Shown in pieces: positions 1,458 to 9,032 of a stretch of DNA of 64,000 nucleotides (its first letter is position 1; each line of letters begins with the position of its first letter). A program made the position numbers and the translations under genes. Origin of the DNA: Oopsacas minuta (lineage: Eukaryota > Animalia > Porifera); NCBI GenBank assembly GCA_024704765.1, contig JAKMXF010000299.1, forward strand, positions 124,001 to 188,000, given 5' to 3'. The notes under the pieces are model-generated. The model saw only the letters and a program-made list of their open reading frames with translations. It did no database searches and was not told where the DNA came from.

Positions 1458-1533
1458 ATTTAACATATAACTTTATTAGTGAGGGATAAAATATGGAATC
1501 CTTTCATAGTTTGCGATTTTGTACGCATATAGA

Positions 1534-4500
1534 TTATATTAAATTGTTTTGTATATATTGTGCGATTTGATGAAGTATTTCCTTATTGCTAGTTTCGAGT
1601 GCTTCTAGTCTCAAGTAGATTCCATCTTCTGTAAGCCCCTTCTTGAATTCACCTTTCTCAATTTCACTTCCTTCTTTTATTTCAACTAGAAACTCTATTA
1701 AACACAAATATTCTGACTCTAGTTTCACTGCTTTGTCTTCTATCATATCCTCACTATCACTATATTTTCTCTTACACCCTACTACTTGATTATCTTCTTC
1801 CATTGATAAGCTCTCTCTCATCTTCTTTATCCTCTTCTTCCTCCTCTGATTCGCCCACGTATTCCTATACGCAATACATATATACTTGCTACCTTCATAT
1901 ACCTCTATCTCTAGCTGTAAGCTCTCAAACACATCCATTAGCACTTTATCTATCTTCATTGTAGCTCCTTCTTCCTATAGATCAACATACAAATAAGTAA
2001 TTGAGTATTTTGGTTATTATAATCAGTTGATTGAATACCTTGTATAATTGTATAAATAAAGGTTTTTGTACTGAGGGCGTTATCAATGGTACCCAGCTTT
2101 TGAAATGCAGATCAAACGACCAGGCTATCGCCCATCTTCTCGTCTTGCCTTGTATAAACTCAGTTTGGGTTATTTTAGGTACTTTCTCGGCTTCTAACAC
2201 CTTCAGTAGAATAGCTACATGACATTTCTTCCCTAACATGGATGAGAACCATGTCACTCTGTTTCTGAGTAGTAAACTTTCTTCGATTATCTTCTTCACA
2301 AACTTTAGTTCGCCTCCCTCTGTTACACATTCCTCCAGCATACATTCCTGCCGTGATGTGTTGTTGCTAGGGCGGTGACTTGTCCGATCTTCTGGTGCTA
2401 AATAAAGTATATACATATTTAATTAAATTTTAATTACAGATTTATTAGCAAAAAATGAGTTTTCTTTCCTCTTCAAAACCCATAACAGATATCAAAGTTG
2501 TCTCCAACAAGACAGAGTTACCAGCTGGCTATCAGCTGTTAGAATACTCAGCTGATGGACAGAAAGTACAGTTATGGGAGGGTAGACATTATCTCAGCGT
2601 CAGTAAGAGGTACCTGTGTTTCTCAAGGCAAAACTTTGATATAGGTAAGCTATTTGTGTAAATTAATATCCAACCAACTCGTAAACATGTGCGGTTAGAA
2701 ATTGTTCTCTATCAATATACACTTTATAAACGGTTGAAATGACTTCAAATTCCATGATAGAATTTATTCCCATTATACTATGCTCAGCTCCCCTTGGTAT
2801 TACGCTTGTTTGTTGCTTCGCTTGCTGTTGCTGGTACAAATTTTTAACGAAACAAGTTGAAAGAGCATCTGCAAGACCAAATTTCAGACAACAGACAGTT
2901 GCAATTGTTCCACCAGAGCTAATATTCACGGTATCGGATGTACCTGGTTATTCTAATTCCATCATATTGCCTCTACCTAGTTATGAACAAACACAAAATA
3001 CAAATTCTATTGTATTAGCACCAGACACGGATTTTCCCCCTTCTTACGAAGATATATCTAAAGTATAAATAGCTATATATTATAATAATAATAATAATTT
3101 TGTTATATCATTCACTTTATATGATTAAATATTAATATTATAACACCTTATTCTTAGGTTGTATTGAGACCGCGGGTACTGAGGGCTTCACGTTAATAGA
3201 TGACAACCCTCCTTTGGATAAACAAGTAGTCATAACTGACATAAAAATACAGAGTAATACCATGCAACTGGTTGAAGGATTCACTCACGTAGATCAGACA
3301 TTTGACGATGCACAACCGGCTCTAAAGAAGCACAATTTACTACTCAAGTACAGCAAAAGAACACTCGTAAAGCAAGCAGTAACTCAGATTATATTTGTAG
3401 ATTCAGGACAGCTTGGCAGTGTAAGATATTAATCATCTATTAATTAACAGTTATCTTATGTTAGAACTATATGACAGGTTCCTCCTAAATTCAACATACT
3501 CCCGAGTATAAATGGTTACAGCCTGTGTTTCATGCTATCTCCTATCAATAATACTGTAACTACAGCTCCCAAATATAACGTAAAGACAGTAGAACAACAA
3601 CTTAAGGTATGTACACACCTAATAATACATTACACAATTTATATTATTTTGAATAGGAACTTGAAATGAACTCTGGAGCCCAAATGAACCAATCTAATCC
3701 AATAGAGAAGGTTAATCCTATGGAGTTTATAGAAAGATTACCATTCAAGACAAGTGAGTTGCTTGGCTTTAAAGGCATGAACGAGTACAACTCTATTTTA
3801 AATAATAAGATACGTGTAATGACGGAGGATGAGATAGAGTCTAAATTCACTTTTGACTTCTCAAAAGAGAGAAAGATTGTAGAAGCAGCTATCTAGTTTT
3901 ATACAGATTTGTGATTAACTTTTGTGACTATTTATGATTGTTGTTGATGATGATTTAGCATAATGCATTAATATTTATTTTGAATACTTAACTCGGATCT
4001 AATTTAATTCTCTTAGCAAAATGGCTAGCCAGTTAGTTGCCACTTCTACTGAGACCGCACCAGACCAATCATTCATTTTTACACCTATAACTGCAACCAA
4101 TGAGGACATACTCAGTGAGAAAAGTACAGCCGAATTGTTGAATAAGTGGGGCTTAACACATAGCCTATTCAAATCAACTTTCTCTTTTGACAAACTTTAT
4201 AAAGAGTATCAATCGGAGAAGATTGTTAGAGACTTTTTCACGGATTCTAGCAACTTCATGTTCTTCCATTCCCCACCTGGAAAGTCTATTAATTTGAATG
4301 TAGATACTCTAAAGATAATTCCTATGACCTGTACTGTAACTAACATGGACTTTTTCGACAGACTTTACGTAGAATCTAGCGCAGAGGGACCTGGCCTGGT
4401 TAAGAAAAGTGGAAATATTTGTGGTTGTTTTGAAGAAATGTTCTATGGAATGTATATTGGAGATGAGCTTAGAAAAATGTTCGTATCAGATGAATCAGAT

Positions 4501-6657
4501 CAATTAGGTATATTCTCTGAATCTGAGATGGATGAGTTCATTTATAATCTCTTAAAACTAGTATGTTTGGGTGGTACAGTTAACCAATATGAAGATACAC
4601 TACAACCTTATCTTGAGGTTGTATTGCAGTTATATAGGAATCTCATTACAGTAGTGAAAGACCCCATAAGTGAAGAAATCCGCACTAGCTCATTAGTTTA
4701 CACTGTTACTGGGTATAATCAGGACAAACTCATATTCCCGAGCAACCACGTACACCCACAGAATGTATGTTATGCTATAATTGATCCGGCAAAGAGGCGC
4801 TTAACTACTTTTTACCATATATGGAATTAATTTCTATTATTCATAAACATTATCACTTATTAATCCTTGTATATTGTAATTTTATCAATTAGTGCTTAGC
4901 TTGTATTATGAAGCTAAAATGGGGTATACTGAGTGCTGGTAAAATTTCGCATGATTTCGTATCTGCTCTGAAAGCGCTTCCGTCAGCAGAACACCAGGTG
5001 GTGGCAGTGGCCGCGAGAAATGAGAAGTCTGCTCAAGAATTCGCGACTTTTCACACAATTCCTAAGTTCTACGGTGGTTACCAGAGCTTGTATGCAGATG
5101 AAGAAGTACAAATAGTGTATATCGGTAAGTTTATCACTTTAACTTCACCAATAAACAAGCATATTATTATAACTTGTATTCTAGGAGTTACTAATCCACA
5201 ACACCTAGAATGTGTGAAACAAGCGTTAGTTCATAAGAAGCATGTCTTATGTGAGAAACCCCTAGGTATAAACTGTAGAGAAGTAGAAGAGATGGTTACA
5301 ACAGCTAGTGCTAATAAAGTATTCTTTATGGAAGCAGTATGGACTAGATTTATACCCAGCACTAATGCATTAAGAGAAGAGTTAATTAGCGGTAGTATAG
5401 GGGAGATACGGTATATACATGCTGAATTTGGTATTCATCCTATACCTTTGCCTGCTAGAATGAGTGATCCTGATTTAGGGGGTGGATCAATACTAGACCT
5501 TGGTGTGTATGTGGTTAATCTAACTAGCATGGTAATGGGTAATAAACGTCCGTCTAAGATTAGTGTATCTGGATCAAGAAATGATAAGGGAGTAGATGAG
5601 TCAGCGTATTTCACTTTAGAGTATCCTGGAGACGTTGTAGCTCAATTGGCATGTAGTGCTGTAGTACAAATGAATAATACTCTAAGTGTGTACGGCTCAA
5701 AAGGATATCTGCGGCTGGCAACACCTTTCCATGCCTCAGACAAGCTAGAGACCAGTGATGGAGTAAGAGAATTCCCCTTTCCACAATCTGATGCCAAATA
5801 TAACTTCAGAAATTCAGTAGCTCTATGCTATGAAGCAGTACACTGTAGAGAATGCATTATGCAAGGAAAGACAGAGAGTCCAATAATGCCATTAGAAGAT
5901 AGCTGGGTTGTGTGTGGTATACTGGATGAAGCAAGGAAACAATTAAGTGTCAAATATCCCCAGGACATATAGTAGCTCTATTTTATTATTTGTACTATTA
6001 ATAGTTTATTTCTTACCTGTTTTCTCCTTTATGCTTGAATAAAATGGAGGGTTACACATAACAAAATTGAATTTAACATCTCTCCATTCCTTGCCCAAGA
6101 TAGTTAACAATAAATTACTGTTTATTTCTACTGGCTTGGCTAGCTTTATGTTATCTTCTAGATTGTTGTTTAGGATTATCTTTTCTGCTATCTGTAATGA
6201 GGTAGTTGCTATTTCAGTACCTACGTAATAGGAAGCATACACATGTACACGAAAATAACATAACAATAAGATAATTACCGTAAAATCTCCAATTATTCAT
6301 CCTTACCCCAAGCAGGGGGTAAATACAAGAAGCTCCCACCCCTATATCCAGTCCTATGACCTCTGGACCCTTAGGTACCTCCCCCTCATCCTCAGACAAC
6401 AGGTCCTCTATCCAATGTAGATAGTTCAATCGTAGAGGTATTGTAGGTACCAAATGTTCCTCATCAATGTCCCATTTCAAATTGAAATCCTGAGCTAACA
6501 ATGCTTTAGTAAGCTCTTTTACTGCTTTGTTGTTTGAGAAATCAATTGTGCCATATTCTGTTGTCCTCTGAAAAATATAAGGCTGTAGTGATGGATAGCT
6601 TCTTGATAGCTGTAGAAAGTCTGCAGGATTTTTCCAATACTTATTACGTGGGTGCAT
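1534..6657 (-). CDS. METTL16: U6 snRNA/mRNA m6A methyltransferase METTL16; exons 6657..6279, 6220..6017, 2397..2039, 1974..1534
   Basis: MHPRN start, LVPTIPLRLNYLHWIEDLL, GLDIGVGASCIYPLLG, MCNPPFY, TEGGELKFV and QGKTRRWAIAWSF. All three GT-AG junctions are phase-compatible; intron 2 spans 2398..6016. Confidence 0.93.
2455..3896 (+). CDS. MVB12: ESCRT-I subunit MVB12 (MABP + UMA domains); exons 2455..2644, 3158..3420, 3478..3606, 3657..3896
   Basis: PITDIKVV..LPAGY..SADG..LWEG..RYLCFSR matches the MABP domain, continued by VVITDIKI and AVTQI..VPPKF. C-terminal LPF...EIESKFTFDFSKER is UMA-like. Splice phases are consistent. Confidence 0.8.
2739..3068 (+). CDS. Orphan 109-aa single-pass membrane protein with Cys-rich juxtamembrane segment and LPSY/PPSY (PY) motifs, nested in MVB12 intron 1
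   Basis: Hydrophobic FIPIILCSAPLGITLVCCFACCCWY followed by a basic stop-transfer (KFLTK), then LPSYEQ and PPSYEDI. Lies wholly within intron 2645..3157. Confidence 0.65.
   Translation: MTSNSMIEFIPIILCSAPLGITLVCCFACCCWYKFLTKQVERASARPNFRQQTVAIVPPELIFTVSDVPGYSNSIILPLPSYEQTQNTNSIVLAPDTDFPPSYEDISKV
4021..4830 (+). CDS. CFAP300: Cilia- and flagella-associated protein 300 (C11orf70), single exon
   Basis: LLNKWGL, FSFDK.Y..YQSE..V.DFF, MDFFDRLY, ELRKM, FIYNLLKLVCLGG.VNQYED.L.PYL, HPQN.CY.IIDP.KR....FYH. Confidence 0.9.
   Translation: MASQLVATSTETAPDQSFIFTPITATNEDILSEKSTAELLNKWGLTHSLFKSTFSFDKLYKEYQSEKIVRDFFTDSSNFMFFHSPPGKSINLNVDTLKIIPMTCTVTNMDFFDRLYVESSAEGPGLVKKSGNICGCFEEMFYGMYIGDELRKMFVSDESDQLGIFSESEMDEFIYNLLKLVCLGGTVNQYEDTLQPYLEVVLQLYRNLITVVKDPISEEIRTSSLVYTVTGYNQDKLIFPSNHVHPQNVCYAIIDPAKRRLTTFYHIWN
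4908..5972 (+). CDS. DHDH: Trans-1,2-dihydrobenzene-1,2-diol dehydrogenase (Gfo/Idh/MocA family); one 60-nt intron at 5125..5184
   Basis: KWGILSAGKISHDF, KHVLCEKP, FFMEAVWTRF, GGGSILDLGVY. Removing gtaagt...ctag restores IVYIGVTNPQH. Confidence 0.92.
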   Translation: MKLKWGILSAGKISHDFVSALKALPSAEHQVVAVAARNEKSAQEFATFHTIPKFYGGYQSLYADEEVQIVYIGKFITLTSPINKHIIITCILGVTNPQHLECVKQALVHKKHVLCEKPLGINCREVEEMVTTASANKVFFMEAVWTRFIPSTNALREELISGSIGEIRYIHAEFGIHPIPLPARMSDPDLGGGSILDLGVYVVNLTSMVMGNKRPSKISVSGSRNDKGVDESAYFTLEYPGDVVAQLACSAVVQMNNTLSVYGSKGYLRLATPFHASDKLETSDGVREFPFPQSDAKYNFRNSVALCYEAVHCRECIMQGKTESPIMPLEDSWVVCGILDEARKQLSVKYPQDI

Positions 6658-6806
6658 TTGGATACAGCTAAGCGCGATATTGCATAATTATAATTTTGTA
6701 ATTTTAACCACGAATCATTTTAAGTATTAAGGTGAATTTAATTAGTGAAGGTCATTCCACCTCGATTATATAAAGTAAATGATCCCTGCAGAATATTATA
6801 AGAAAT

Positions 6807-7704: not shown

Positions 7705-8358
7705 ATGGAAGAGATAAAAGACATTTTATCTAATTCCAAAGAGAAATCAAACCCAGGAAAAAGTGAGGTTCTTCAACAATTTGTGCTTACACAATCAAAG
7801 GAGAACACCTACTGTAAAGAAGCTAATATAATTCTCCTCAAAATGTACACATTATTCCCAGAATGTCATCACAATCTAACAGTATGTCTAATTCTACTGA
7901 AGGCTCTAGCTGCACTGCCTGAAACAGATTTCGTATTGTGTAAATCACTAATCCCACACAATAAACATAACGACTCTGGTATCGCTAGAATATTCAAAAT
8001 GCACCAATTCTTGGAGAGATGCCAGTTCAATGAGTTCTGGCTCTACCTCAAAGAGAATGAAGACATTATAAAGGGGGTAACAGGCTTTAAGGAGTCCATA
8101 CTTACCTATATTAAAGGTGTCATAAAGCTAACCTATAAGAGTTTACATAGAGATATGTTATCTAAACTCTTATATACTAAGGGTAAGGAATTGGATCAGC
8201 TGATTGCTAAAGAAGGATGGAAACTCAAAGAAAATGGAACTGTTGAAGTGAGAAGTTCAGCTGATTTTGCTGCTATAGCAAGCAAGCAGTATTCTTCATT
8301 CAAAGAGTTCTCAGTACAAAGTATTTCTAATTCGTTATACTTGGATATGAATCAGTGA
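7705..8358 (+). CDS. EIF3K: Eukaryotic translation initiation factor 3 subunit K
   Basis: TQSKENTY..EAN...LKMY, ILLKALAALPETDFVLCK and LERCQFNEFW match eIF3k. Confidence 0.9.
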   Translation: MEEIKDILSNSKEKSNPGKSEVLQQFVLTQSKENTYCKEANIILLKMYTLFPECHHNLTVCLILLKALAALPETDFVLCKSLIPHNKHNDSGIARIFKMHQFLERCQFNEFWLYLKENEDIIKGVTGFKESILTYIKGVIKLTYKSLHRDMLSKLLYTKGKELDQLIAKEGWKLKENGTVEVRSSADFAAIASKQYSSFKEFSVQSISNSLYLDMNQ

Positions 8359-8672
8359 ATTGTATTATTATTGTTTAGATTAATAGTCAGATAATATTTG
8401 TTTATTAAAATTGAGAATAACAATTTTAATAAAGTAGAAATTGTAATAATAAGAAGGAAAATTATATTTTGACTACTATATATGACTTATTTAATTTCTC
8501 CATTCTTATTGTGAGTCTACACTGATGTAAGGTGTTGTATTAGGGAATTATATTTAATTAGAATTTATCAATAAATATATTTGTATTATTAAGACTTTCT
8601 AAATATATATTGAGATATTATCTGAATACAACTTCCTATATTGAACCGAACCTTTAGCTTCTGTACTGCATA

Positions 8673-8819
8673 CAGTGGTGTTCGCCTAGCATATCATATT
8701 TTGCACGAATTTCCCTTGCTAATACGCTATTAGAGGAATTATTTCCGATACAAAATGGACTCTAAATCCTTGAAAAAACTTGCTATTAGGCGAATAGCTA
8801 ATAGCCAAACGTCACTTGT
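8673..8819. mobile_element. Possible degenerate TA-flanked MITE
   Basis: TA|CAGTGGTGTTCGCCTAGC on the left and GCTAATAGCCAAACGTCACTTG|TA on the right are imperfect inverted ends beginning CAGT/CAAGT. Confidence 0.3.
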
Positions 8820-9032
8820 AAATATAGAACGTTCTAATACAAATCCTATAGTTTGTAACTCATTATGTTATTTTGCATAATTTGCATTATTTATGAGAAC
8901 TATCACATAATTATACTACAGTTTTACGAGCATGTTTGATGTATAATTTACTACTAGAACCAAGTTATGTTCTTGGTATAACAAGTGGGGTAGACAAACA
9001 CGGATGTTCTAGTCACAACCAATTTATGCTTT

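What the first reader, a model, noticed from the sequence alone, without database searches (positions are those of the whole stretch)
2645..3157. Russian-doll gene: PPxY membrane protein nested on the same strand in an ESCRT-I (MVB12) intron, itself inside METTL16
Seen: MVB12 intron 1 (513 bp) contains a 109-codon ORF with one TM helix, a CCxxCCC cluster, LPSY and PPSY motifs and a terminal YEDI. Established: PPxY/LPxY motifs bind WW domains of Nedd4-family ligases, which ubiquitinate cargo for ESCRT sorting; juxtamembrane Cys clusters are typical palmitoylation sites; YxxPhi is an endocytic signal. Inference: a Nedd4 adaptor or cargo is co-transcribed with an ESCRT-I subunit of the same pathway. 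Also seen: the MVB12 exon-1 donor (2645, phase 1) is in frame with the AG at 2759-2760 inside this ORF. A 116-nt alternative intron would give a 165-aa MVB12(1-63)-TM-PY chimera, although a half MABP domain may not fold.
Basis: partly seen in the sequence, partly recalled or inferred. Interest (0 to 1): 0.8.

Follow-up and report, generated by a model that had tools for sequence, protein, structure and literature searches.

The report
Unannotated PY-tail membrane gene in MVB12 intron
A small, previously unannotated gene for a single-pass membrane protein with a conserved PPxY tail really does sit inside the first intron of the glass sponge's ESCRT-I gene MVB12, which itself lies inside an intron of METTL16. 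It is a real gene of a restricted lineage, but nothing shows that it works together with its host.

Summary
The window is Oopsacas minuta (glass sponge) contig JAKMXF010000299.1.

**Observation confirmed:**
- MVB12 intron 1 is 2645-3157 (513 bp). RNA contigs confirm its junction.
- It holds a same-strand 109-codon ORF (2739-3068): one hydrophobic helix, a CCxxCCC cluster, LPSY, PPSY and YEDI.
- An RNA junction 2397|6017 on the minus strand confirms that METTL16 spans MVB12, so the triple nesting is real.

**The ORF is a real gene, missing from the GenBank annotation:**
- Two other hexactinellid-like assemblies carry a same-strand ORF (139 and 116 aa) in the same intron.
- Both have the same build: helix, Cys-rich juxtamembrane stretch, and a C-terminal D[FL]PP[ST]YED.
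- Between them pN is 0.26 and pS 0.52 (p = 8e-5).
- Two haplotype contigs differ by 2 synonymous sites in the ORF, against about 18 events in the intron flanks.
- A discrete RNA contig covers 2743-3170.

**Limits on the reading:**
- Two further assemblies have a 61-nt intron and no ORF. One of them branches inside the carrier clade, so the gene was lost there.
- Only the C-terminal PPxY is conserved; LPSY is not.
- No junction supports the proposed MVB12-TM-PY chimera.
- RNA does not show co-transcription with MVB12.
- No homologue was found outside this locus.
- The Nedd4-adaptor or cargo function is inferred from motifs only.
- Earlier notes from this scan report other small PY-tail membrane genes in this genome.

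The parts
2739..3068 (+). Nested ORF of 109 codons plus stop. A second in-frame ATG lies at 2754.
   Evidence: An upstream in-frame stop lies 4 codons before the ATG. Orthologous ORFs occupy the same intron in L002 and L003.
2757..2837 (+). Hydrophobic helix (residues 7-33), read as a signal-anchor or transmembrane segment. It includes the CCFACCC cluster at 2811-2831.
   Evidence: Maximum Kyte-Doolittle 19-residue window is 2.34. AlphaFold models a helix at residues 5-44, pLDDT 75-88, and the rest is disordered.
2973..2984 (+). LPSY motif, specific to O. minuta.
   Evidence: It aligns with MRSY and MHSN in the relatives.
3030..3056 (+). Conserved C-terminal block DFPPSYEDI: PPxY overlapping YxxPhi.
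   Evidence: D, PP, Y, E and D are invariant in three species. The block is also conserved at the DNA level.
2645..3157 (+). MVB12 intron 1, 513 bp, GT..AG.
   Evidence: RNA contig junction, depth 2646. The orthologous intron is 727 bp in L002, 782 bp in L003 and 61 bp in L004 and L007.
2743..3170 (.). RNA contig of run X4 covering the ORF and its 3' flank. The library is unstranded.
   Evidence: record 23, depth 270. An adapter lies directly before 2743. Bin arithmetic shows no other laid contig in 2705-2879.
3124..3129 (+). ATTAAA, a candidate poly(A) signal for the nested gene.
   Evidence: This is sequence only and has not been tested.
2708..2714 (+). TCTATCA, shared with a 30-nt conserved block upstream of the ORF in L002 and L003. 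Candidate promoter element.
   Evidence: Weak: the motif is short.
2455..2644 (+). MVB12 exon 1.
   Evidence: Pfam PF10240, 4e-10.
3158..3420 (+). MVB12 exon 2. Exons 3 (3478-3606) and 4 (3657-3896) follow.
   Evidence: Pfam PF10240, 3e-11. The exon lengths sum to the annotated 273-aa product.
2398..6016 (-). METTL16 intron of 3619 bp holding MVB12, CFAP300 and a GFO/IDH-type oxidoreductase gene.
   Evidence: RNA junction 2397|6017, CT..AC on the + strand. Pfam PF05971 hits on both sides. The gene order is the same in every complete related locus.

Best explanation
Positions 2739-3068 are a real protein-coding gene restricted to a hexactinellid lineage. The O. minuta annotation missed it. It is nested on the same strand in intron 1 of MVB12.

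**Shown**
- The ORF, its position and its strand are kept in three species.
- It evolves under purifying selection.
- RNA covers it.

**Inferred: the product**
- It is a small type-III membrane protein (N-terminus out, C-terminus in).
- Its helix ends in a Cys-rich, probably palmitoylated, stretch.
- Its disordered cytosolic tail ends in a composite PPxY/YxxPhi signal.

**Inferred: the mechanism**
- The PPxY recruits a WW-HECT (Nedd4-family) ligase.
- The protein, or a partner it binds in the membrane, is then ubiquitinated and sorted to endosomes or multivesicular bodies.
- The overlapping YxxPhi offers clathrin-adaptor sorting as an alternative.

**Inferred: expression and origin**
- It most likely has its own transcript, starting near 2743 or a little upstream and ending near the host acceptor.
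- It was probably inserted between the branch site and the acceptor of an ancestral intron of about 60 nt.
- Its presence in an ESCRT-I gene is more likely coincidence than functional coupling.
For: **Conservation**
- ORFs lie in the same intron and on the same strand in L002 (139 aa) and L003 (116 aa), with the same build and the C-terminal D[FL]PP[ST]YED.
- The Om-L003 tblastn match has E = 0.008-0.015 in a small database.

**Selection**
- L002 vs L003: pN 0.262, pS 0.520, Fisher p = 8e-5, dN/dS 0.36-0.47, and an excess of third-position changes.
- All indels are in frame, including a 45-nt unit present three times in L002 and once in L003.
- Haplotype contigs L003 and L008: 2 synonymous differences in 351 nt of ORF, against about 18 events in 430 nt of intron flanks, p = 0.001.

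**Start codon and chance**
- Each species has an ATG with a purine at -3. In-frame stops lie 3-4 codons upstream in two of the three.
- An ORF this long arises in 0.1% of shuffles.

**RNA**
- Contig 2743-3170 has depth 270, similar to the METTL16 exons at 364-570.

**Structure and class**
- One helix, then a disordered tail.
- The nearest Atlas clusters are small single-pass proteins: MLANA, TMEM52B and PRR7/WBP-1-like.

**Background**
- Established knowledge: PY motifs of membrane adaptors bind the WW domains of NEDD4-like ligases (PMC12720080, PMC7342019, PMC6913780).
- Nested genes are common in glass sponges and are under-called in the O. minuta annotation (PMC10282587).
Against: - The RNA evidence is contigs from one unstranded library. 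Its depth is only about 10% of the host junction contig, so intron retention could supply part of it. The contig also runs 13 nt past the host acceptor.
- The read-laying tool warns that holes in contig coverage prove nothing.
- No homologue was found outside this locus, and there is no family match.
- Identity between O. minuta and the relatives is only 21-24%.
- The gene is dispensable in at least one close relative (L004).
- Topology, palmitoylation and WW binding are untested.
- The presence of a Nedd4-type ligase in O. minuta was not checked here.
Confidence: 0.7

Rival explanations
1. The ORF is an alternative last exon of MVB12. Splicing from the exon-1 donor to an AG just inside the ORF (2759-2760) would give a chimera of MVB12 residues 1-63 with the helix and PY tail. 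There would be no separate gene.
For: In all three species an AG whose G is the first base of an ORF codon lies within the first 8 codons. A phase-1 splice from exon 1 would therefore be in frame and free of stops: Om 2759-2760, L002 8245-8246, L003 8503-8504 and 8509-8510. The ORF is on the host's strand.
Against: - No such junction appears among the RNA contigs, while 2644|3158 is present.
- The RNA contig begins at 2743, upstream of that AG.
- Every species keeps an ATG with a good context, and two have stops just upstream.
- L002 and L003 share a conserved non-coding block upstream of the ATG.
- Such AGs are expected by chance at about this rate.
- Half a MABP domain is unlikely to fold.
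Confidence: 0.1
2. It is a real gene, but the hydrophobic N-terminus is a cleaved signal peptide, or the tail faces the lumen or outside. The PPxY would then never meet cytosolic WW domains, and the product would be a secreted or ecto-peptide.
For: The hydrophobic stretch starts within 4-12 residues of the N-terminus. The tails of L002 and L003 carry N-x-T sequons in the DEQYTINNTT unit.
Against: - The hydrophobic run is about 25-28 residues, long for a signal peptide h-region.
- The N-terminal flanks are neutral or acidic, and in O. minuta the C-terminal flank is strongly basic. This favours N-out, C-in.
- The sequons are absent from O. minuta.
- The best conserved element is a cytosolic-type linear motif.
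Confidence: 0.1
3. It is not a functional gene. The ORF is a remnant of an inserted sequence, kept open by chance or by constraint on the intron's DNA, and the RNA signal is retained host intron.
For: Its depth is about one tenth of the host junction contig, and the contig crosses the acceptor. There are no homologues elsewhere. The gene is lost in L004 and absent in L007.
Against: - Open frames are kept in three species at 21-53% protein identity.
- pN is well below pS.
- Haplotype differences avoid the ORF and are synonymous within it.
- Indels are in frame.
- Chance gives an ORF this long in 0.1% of shuffles.
Confidence: 0.07

Closest known systems
Small single-pass PY-motif membrane proteins such as MLANA/MART-1, PMEPA1, PRR7 and the WBP1/VOPP1 group
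   Same: About 100-140 residues, with a very short N-terminal part, one helix and a disordered tail ending in PPxY. MLANA, TMEM52B and PRR7/WBP-1-like clusters are the nearest by language-model features, at 0.82-0.91.
   Different: There is no sequence or profile match. It has no Cys-rich ectodomain of the WBP1 or Shisa type. The Atlas scores are leads only. The resemblance is one of class, not of descent.
Ndfip1/2, Bsd2, TMEM127 and Commissureless (membrane adaptors of Nedd4-family ligases)
   Same: These are membrane proteins whose PY motifs recruit and activate WW-HECT ligases to send partners to endosomal degradation (PMC12720080, PMC7342019, PMC6913780). The proposed mechanism here is the same.
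   Different: Ndfip has three helices and TMEM127 four, and both have several PY motifs. Here there is one helix and only one conserved PY. There is no homology, and no partner or ligase has been identified.
Nested genes of glass sponges (Aphrocallistes vastus genome paper, PMC10282587)
   Same: A whole gene lies inside the intron of another, in a compact hexactinellid genome with conserved microsynteny. That paper counts 2432 nested genes in A. vastus and only 83 in the O. minuta annotation, which it attributes to the annotation method.
   Different: Here the nesting has three levels. The innermost gene is on the host's strand, is unannotated, and is present or absent depending on the species.

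Membership tests
Nested (intronic) gene | The whole gene lies within one intron of a host gene, and that intron's splicing is documented. | tested here: met
   Junction 2644|3158 in RNA contigs. The ORF at 2739-3068 lies inside it.
Nested (intronic) gene | It has its own transcript, with its own 5' and 3' ends. | tested here: inconclusive
   A discrete contig covers 2743-3170 with an adapter at its 5' side, and no laid contig covers 2705-2742. But the data are contigs only and unstranded, and the contig crosses the host acceptor.
Protein-coding gene under selection | The open frame is kept in orthologous position, with dN below dS. | tested here: met
PY-motif ligand of WW-HECT (Nedd4-family) ligases | A (L/P)PxY motif conserved among orthologues. 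| tested here: met
   PP[ST]Y is invariant in three species. LPSY is not conserved.
PY-motif ligand of WW-HECT (Nedd4-family) ligases | The motif faces the cytosol. | not testable with these tools
   Inferred only, from the charge distribution around the helix.
PY-motif ligand of WW-HECT (Nedd4-family) ligases | Physical binding to a WW domain, and a ligase present in the organism. | not tested
Notes and paper look-ups found nothing.
WBP-1/VOPP1 (PF11669), Shisa (PF13908), MLANA (PF14991) | A match to the family profile. | tested here: not met
   No Pfam family for the O. minuta protein at E up to 10. The relatives give only scattered chance-level hits.
Ndfip/Bsd2 (PF10176) | Three transmembrane helices after the PY motifs. 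| tested here: not met
   A single helix, which lies before the PY motif.
MVB12 (host gene) | MABP/MVB12 profile match. | tested here: met
   PF10240 hits exon 1 and exon 2.
METTL16 (outer host) | Methyltransf_10 profile on both sides of the 3619-bp intron, and a splice joining them. | tested here: met
   PF05971 hits. RNA junction 2397|6017.

The most novel reading that the evidence does not exclude
The nested PY-tail gene and its host MVB12 are functionally coupled. Either the choice between host transcription with splicing and polyadenylation inside intron 1 sets the ratio of an ESCRT-I subunit to a Nedd4 adaptor or cargo. Or a rare in-frame splice makes a membrane-anchored chimera of half a MABP domain with the PY tail. 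In-frame AGs just inside the ORF exist in all three species.
Probability: 0.1. Interest if true: 0.65.

Novelty: new member of a known kind. Interest (0 to 1): 0.4.

Why it matters
- It adds a real, selected gene that the O. minuta annotation lacks. It also shows concretely how nested genes are missed there: METTL16 is split into two gene models, and CFAP300 is fused to its neighbour.
- It gives a clean case of gain and loss of an intronic gene among close glass-sponge genomes.
- Other notes of this scan report further small PY-tail membrane genes in this genome. If those hold up, glass sponges may use many fast-evolving PY-tail proteins to steer membrane proteins into the ubiquitin/ESCRT route. 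That could bear on membrane turnover in a syncytial animal.
- The location inside an ESCRT-I gene is suggestive, but probably coincidental.

Tried and rejected
**Searches on the ORF that found nothing**
- Pfam and NCBIfam scans: nothing.
- Word-index protein search: nothing, and the exact sequence is not in the 15-billion-protein collection.
- phmmer against 1.8 billion representatives: one hit at E = 8.6e-4 to a 1391-aa tandem-repeat protein matched in 15 stretches. Rejected as compositional.
- Profile of the three orthologues: it returns only the two relatives themselves.
- tblastn for paralogues in the window and in all loci: none.

**Readings considered and rejected or left open**
- Chimera junction 2644|2761: not seen.
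- Leader addition at AG 2697-2698: no contig starts there, and no laid contig covers 2705-2742. Trans-spliced leaders are only weakly documented in glass sponges: 4% of long reads in A. vastus.
- Splicing of the 54-nt intron-like segment 2645-2698: it would stop the MVB12 frame at TGA 2740-2742, overlapping the ATG. This overlap is not conserved in L002, so it was treated as coincidence.

**Look-ups that gave nothing**
- Paper search for the sample accessions, to name the species behind the ENA assemblies: nothing.
- Findings look-up by sequence: blank.

**Constraints respected**
- The joined MVB12 and METTL16 proteins were not searched.
Full report
**Source and layout**

An exact-sequence look-up of neighbouring proteins placed the window on a 1,453,459-bp NCBI contig, JAKMXF010000299.1 of assembly GCA_024704765.1. 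The genome paper names JAKMXF as the Oopsacas minuta whole-genome project (PMC10280926). Window coordinate equals L001 coordinate minus 9317.

The deposited annotation in this stretch:
- MVB12 is called as a 273-aa gene at 2455-3896.
- METTL16 is split into two gene models, 1534-2416 and 6006-6657, both on the minus strand.
- CFAP300 is fused to the following GFO/IDH-type oxidoreductase as one 587-aa product.
- Nothing is called in MVB12 intron 1.

The ORF's product is absent from the 15-billion-protein collection.

**Check of the observation**

- Exon 1 (2455-2644, phase 1) and exon 2 (3158-3420) each hit Pfam PF10240 (MVB12).
- The four exon lengths (190, 263, 129 and 240 nt) add up to the annotated 273 codons plus stop.
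- The intron 2645-3157 is 513 bp. Other introns confirmed here are 58 and 64 nt.
- The ORF 2739-3068 has a hydrophobic stretch at residues 7-33, CCFACCC at 25-31, LPSY at 79-82, PPSY at 100-103 and YEDI at 103-106.
- An ATG-ORF this long arose in 19 of 20000 dinucleotide-preserving shuffles of the intron.

**RNA evidence**

Four runs from one sample hold the stretch. When laid on 1480-6700, three behave as DNA: collinear contigs with Nextera-type ends. The fourth, X4, behaves as RNA: very uneven depth, TruSeq adapter ends and splice joints.

X4 shows these junctions:
- 2644|3158, GT..AG, depth 2646. This is MVB12 intron 1.
- 2397|6017, CT..AC on the + strand, depth 434. This is a 3619-bp METTL16 intron that contains MVB12, CFAP300 and the oxidoreductase gene.
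- Two small METTL16 introns.

So all three levels of the nest are real. No 2644|2761 junction is listed.

One X4 contig (record 23, depth 270) covers 2743-3170 without a break.
- It is directly preceded by adapter letters.
- The value for bin 2705-2879 (211.3) equals 269.9 x 137/175. That contig is therefore the only laid X4 contig in the bin, and 2705-2742 is uncovered.
- This looks like a discrete RNA that nearly coincides with the ORF and its 3' flank, not an evenly retained intron.
- ATTAAA at 3124-3129 is a possible poly(A) signal.

The caveats are serious:
- These are contigs only.
- The library is unstranded (TopHat was run as fr-unstranded).
- The tool warns that holes prove nothing.
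- The depth is about one tenth of the host junction contig.
- The contig runs 13 nt into host exon 2.

I read the RNA evidence as supportive but not decisive.

**Conservation**

CFAP300 lies 125 bp downstream of MVB12. It has five close relatives (64-74% identity) on long ENA contigs. Fetching their loci showed the same gene order throughout, including METTL16 exons on both sides of the MVB12-CFAP300-oxidoreductase block.

MVB12 intron 1 in the relatives:

| Locus | Intron 1 length | Same-strand ORF |
|---|---|---|
| L002 | 727 bp | 139 aa (8240-8659) |
| L003 | 782 bp | 116 aa (8498-8848) |
| L004 | 61 nt | none |
| L007 | 61 nt | none |
| L005 | unknown: contig ends inside exon 2 | unknown |

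The ORFs in L002 and L003 share the O. minuta build:
- a short N-terminus;
- a helix of about 25 residues (maximum hydropathy 2.9 and 2.1);
- several Cys at and after the helix end;
- a C-terminal DLPPTYED (L002) or DLPPSYED (L003), against DFPPSYED in O. minuta.

Overall identity to O. minuta is only 21-24%. The tblastn match covers residues 50-107 (E = 0.008-0.015 in a small database). The C-terminal block is also conserved at the DNA level. The O. minuta LPSY aligns with MRSY and MHSN, so it is not a conserved PY motif.

**Selection**

L002 against L003 (109 aligned codons, 53% identity):
- pN 0.262 and pS 0.520, Fisher p = 8e-5.
- dN/dS 0.36-0.47 by three methods.
- Differences by codon position are 31, 27 and 46.
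- Indels are in frame, including a 45-nt unit (DEQYTINNTTPPDIG) present three times in L002 and once in L003.
- The intron flanks of the two species are only about 59% identical, with many gaps. MVB12 exon 1 is 87% identical.

The profile search found the L003 protein again on a second contig of the same assembly, L008, which is 98.4-98.9% identical. I take it to be the other haplotype. The two contigs differ as follows:
- 2 sites in the 351-nt ORF, both synonymous because the proteins are identical.
- About 18 events in 430 nt of intron flanks, including a 33-nt indel.
- Fisher p = 0.001, or 0.005 for SNPs alone.

Each species has an ATG with a purine at -3. O. minuta and L002 have in-frame stops 4 and 3 codons upstream. 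I take the ORF to be a real gene under purifying selection.

**Gain and loss**

A maximum-likelihood tree was built from four concatenated single-exon neighbours: PEX11, CFAP300, PMM and CSN8 (1026 columns).
- It gives ((L002,L003)76,L004)100.
- O. minuta and L005 fall outside that clade, and L007 sits on the longest branch.
- The tree has no outgroup root.
- L004, which lacks the gene, sits inside a clade whose other members carry it, as does the more distant O. minuta. The simplest reading is one gain followed by a loss in L004.
- L007 either predates the gain or lost the gene as well.

The short L004 intron keeps the TTATCCAAC element that follows the donor in the three long introns. This fits an insertion, and a later deletion, between the branch region and the acceptor. 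MVB12 does not need the nested gene.

**What the protein is**

AlphaFold on the three-sequence alignment gives one helix (residues 5-44, pLDDT 75-88) and a disordered remainder.

No family was found:
- Pfam and NCBIfam give nothing.
- The word search gives nothing.
- phmmer over 1.8 billion representatives gives only a compositional hit to a repeat protein.
- The profile search returns only the two orthologues.

By language-model features, the nearest Atlas clusters are other small single-pass proteins: an arthropod orphan cluster, MLANA, TMEM52B, Myc target 1 and a PRR7/WBP-1-like cluster. This resemblance is a lead about class, not evidence of descent.

**Mechanism (inferred)**
- The neutral or acidic N-terminal flank, and in O. 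minuta the basic C-terminal flank, suggest N-out, C-in insertion. The tail would then be cytosolic.
- The conserved PPxY would bind WW domains of Nedd4-type HECT ligases, as in Ndfip, TMEM127 and Commissureless (PMC12720080, PMC7342019, PMC6913780).
- This would lead to ubiquitination and ESCRT-dependent sorting of the protein or of a membrane partner.
- The Y of PPxY also starts YED[I/V/A], a possible YxxPhi signal.
- The Cys run at the cytosolic end of the helix is a typical palmitoylation context.
- None of this was testable here, and I could not check for a Nedd4-type ligase in O. minuta.

**Relation to the host**

Same-strand nesting means host transcription runs through the nested gene, so its poly(A) signal must mostly be ignored or outrun by splicing.
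The contig boundary at 2743, the conserved ATGs, and a conserved 30-nt block upstream of the ORF in L002 and L003 (sharing TCTATCA with O. minuta at 2708-2714) point instead to a separate promoter.
- The chimera idea cannot be fully excluded. In-frame AGs lie just inside the ORF in all three species. But such AGs are expected by chance, and no junction supports them.
- Other, unchecked notes of this scan report several further small PY-tail membrane genes in this genome, one also nested on the same strand.
- Glass-sponge genomes are known to be rich in nested genes that the O. minuta annotation under-calls (PMC10282587).

Both points make a chance landing in an ESCRT-I intron more likely than a designed pairing.

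**Verdict**
- The gene is real, unannotated and restricted to a lineage.
- The PY-adaptor or cargo reading is plausible but rests on one conserved motif.
- Co-transcription and the chimera are unsupported.
- Interest is moderate.

Noticed in passing
window 1534-2416, 6006-6657 and 4021-5972: The deposited annotation splits METTL16 into two gene models, although an RNA junction 2397|6017 joins them. It also fuses CFAP300 with the downstream GFO/IDH-type oxidoreductase into one 587-aa product.
   Followed up: partly
L002 8360-8500: The nested ORF of L002 carries a 45-nt in-frame unit (DEQYTINNTTPPDIG) three times in tandem. L003 has it once. O. minuta has no clear copy.
   Followed up: partly
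L002 about 8190-8220; L003 about 8455-8485; window 2708-2714: L002 and L003 share a roughly 30-nt GC-richer block about 30-40 nt upstream of the nested ATG. Its TCTATCA core, a GATA-type site on the other strand, is also upstream of the O. minuta ATG. It is a possible promoter element.
   Followed up: no
window 2645-2742: The first 54 nt of the intron (GT at 2645 to AG at 2697-2698) look like a complete short intron. If it were spliced, the MVB12 frame would stop at TGA 2740-2742, overlapping the nested ATG at 2739-2741. The overlap is not conserved in L002.
   Followed up: partly
L005 1588-3942; L007 10900-14953: The GFO/IDH-type oxidoreductase gene next to CFAP300 is tandemly duplicated in these two assemblies. 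It is single in O. minuta, L002, L003 and L004.
   Followed up: no
L005 position 1: This 66-kb contig ends inside MVB12 exon 2, so intron 1 of that species could not be read. The break lies right next to the variable intron.
   Followed up: no
window 3057-3065: The O. minuta protein ends in -SKV, which resembles a class I PDZ ligand. The relatives end differently.
   Followed up: no
window 4975: Runs X2, X3 and X4 read A where the assembly and X1 have C. All runs come from one sample, so this is an allele or an assembly difference.
   Followed up: no
window 3096-3112; L002 about 8690-8705; L003 about 8885-8900: A short T-rich element (ACTTTTGGTTAAT in L002 and L003, AATTTTGTTATAT in O. minuta) lies about 30-45 nt after the nested stop codon in all three species. 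It is a possible 3' UTR or processing signal.
   Followed up: no
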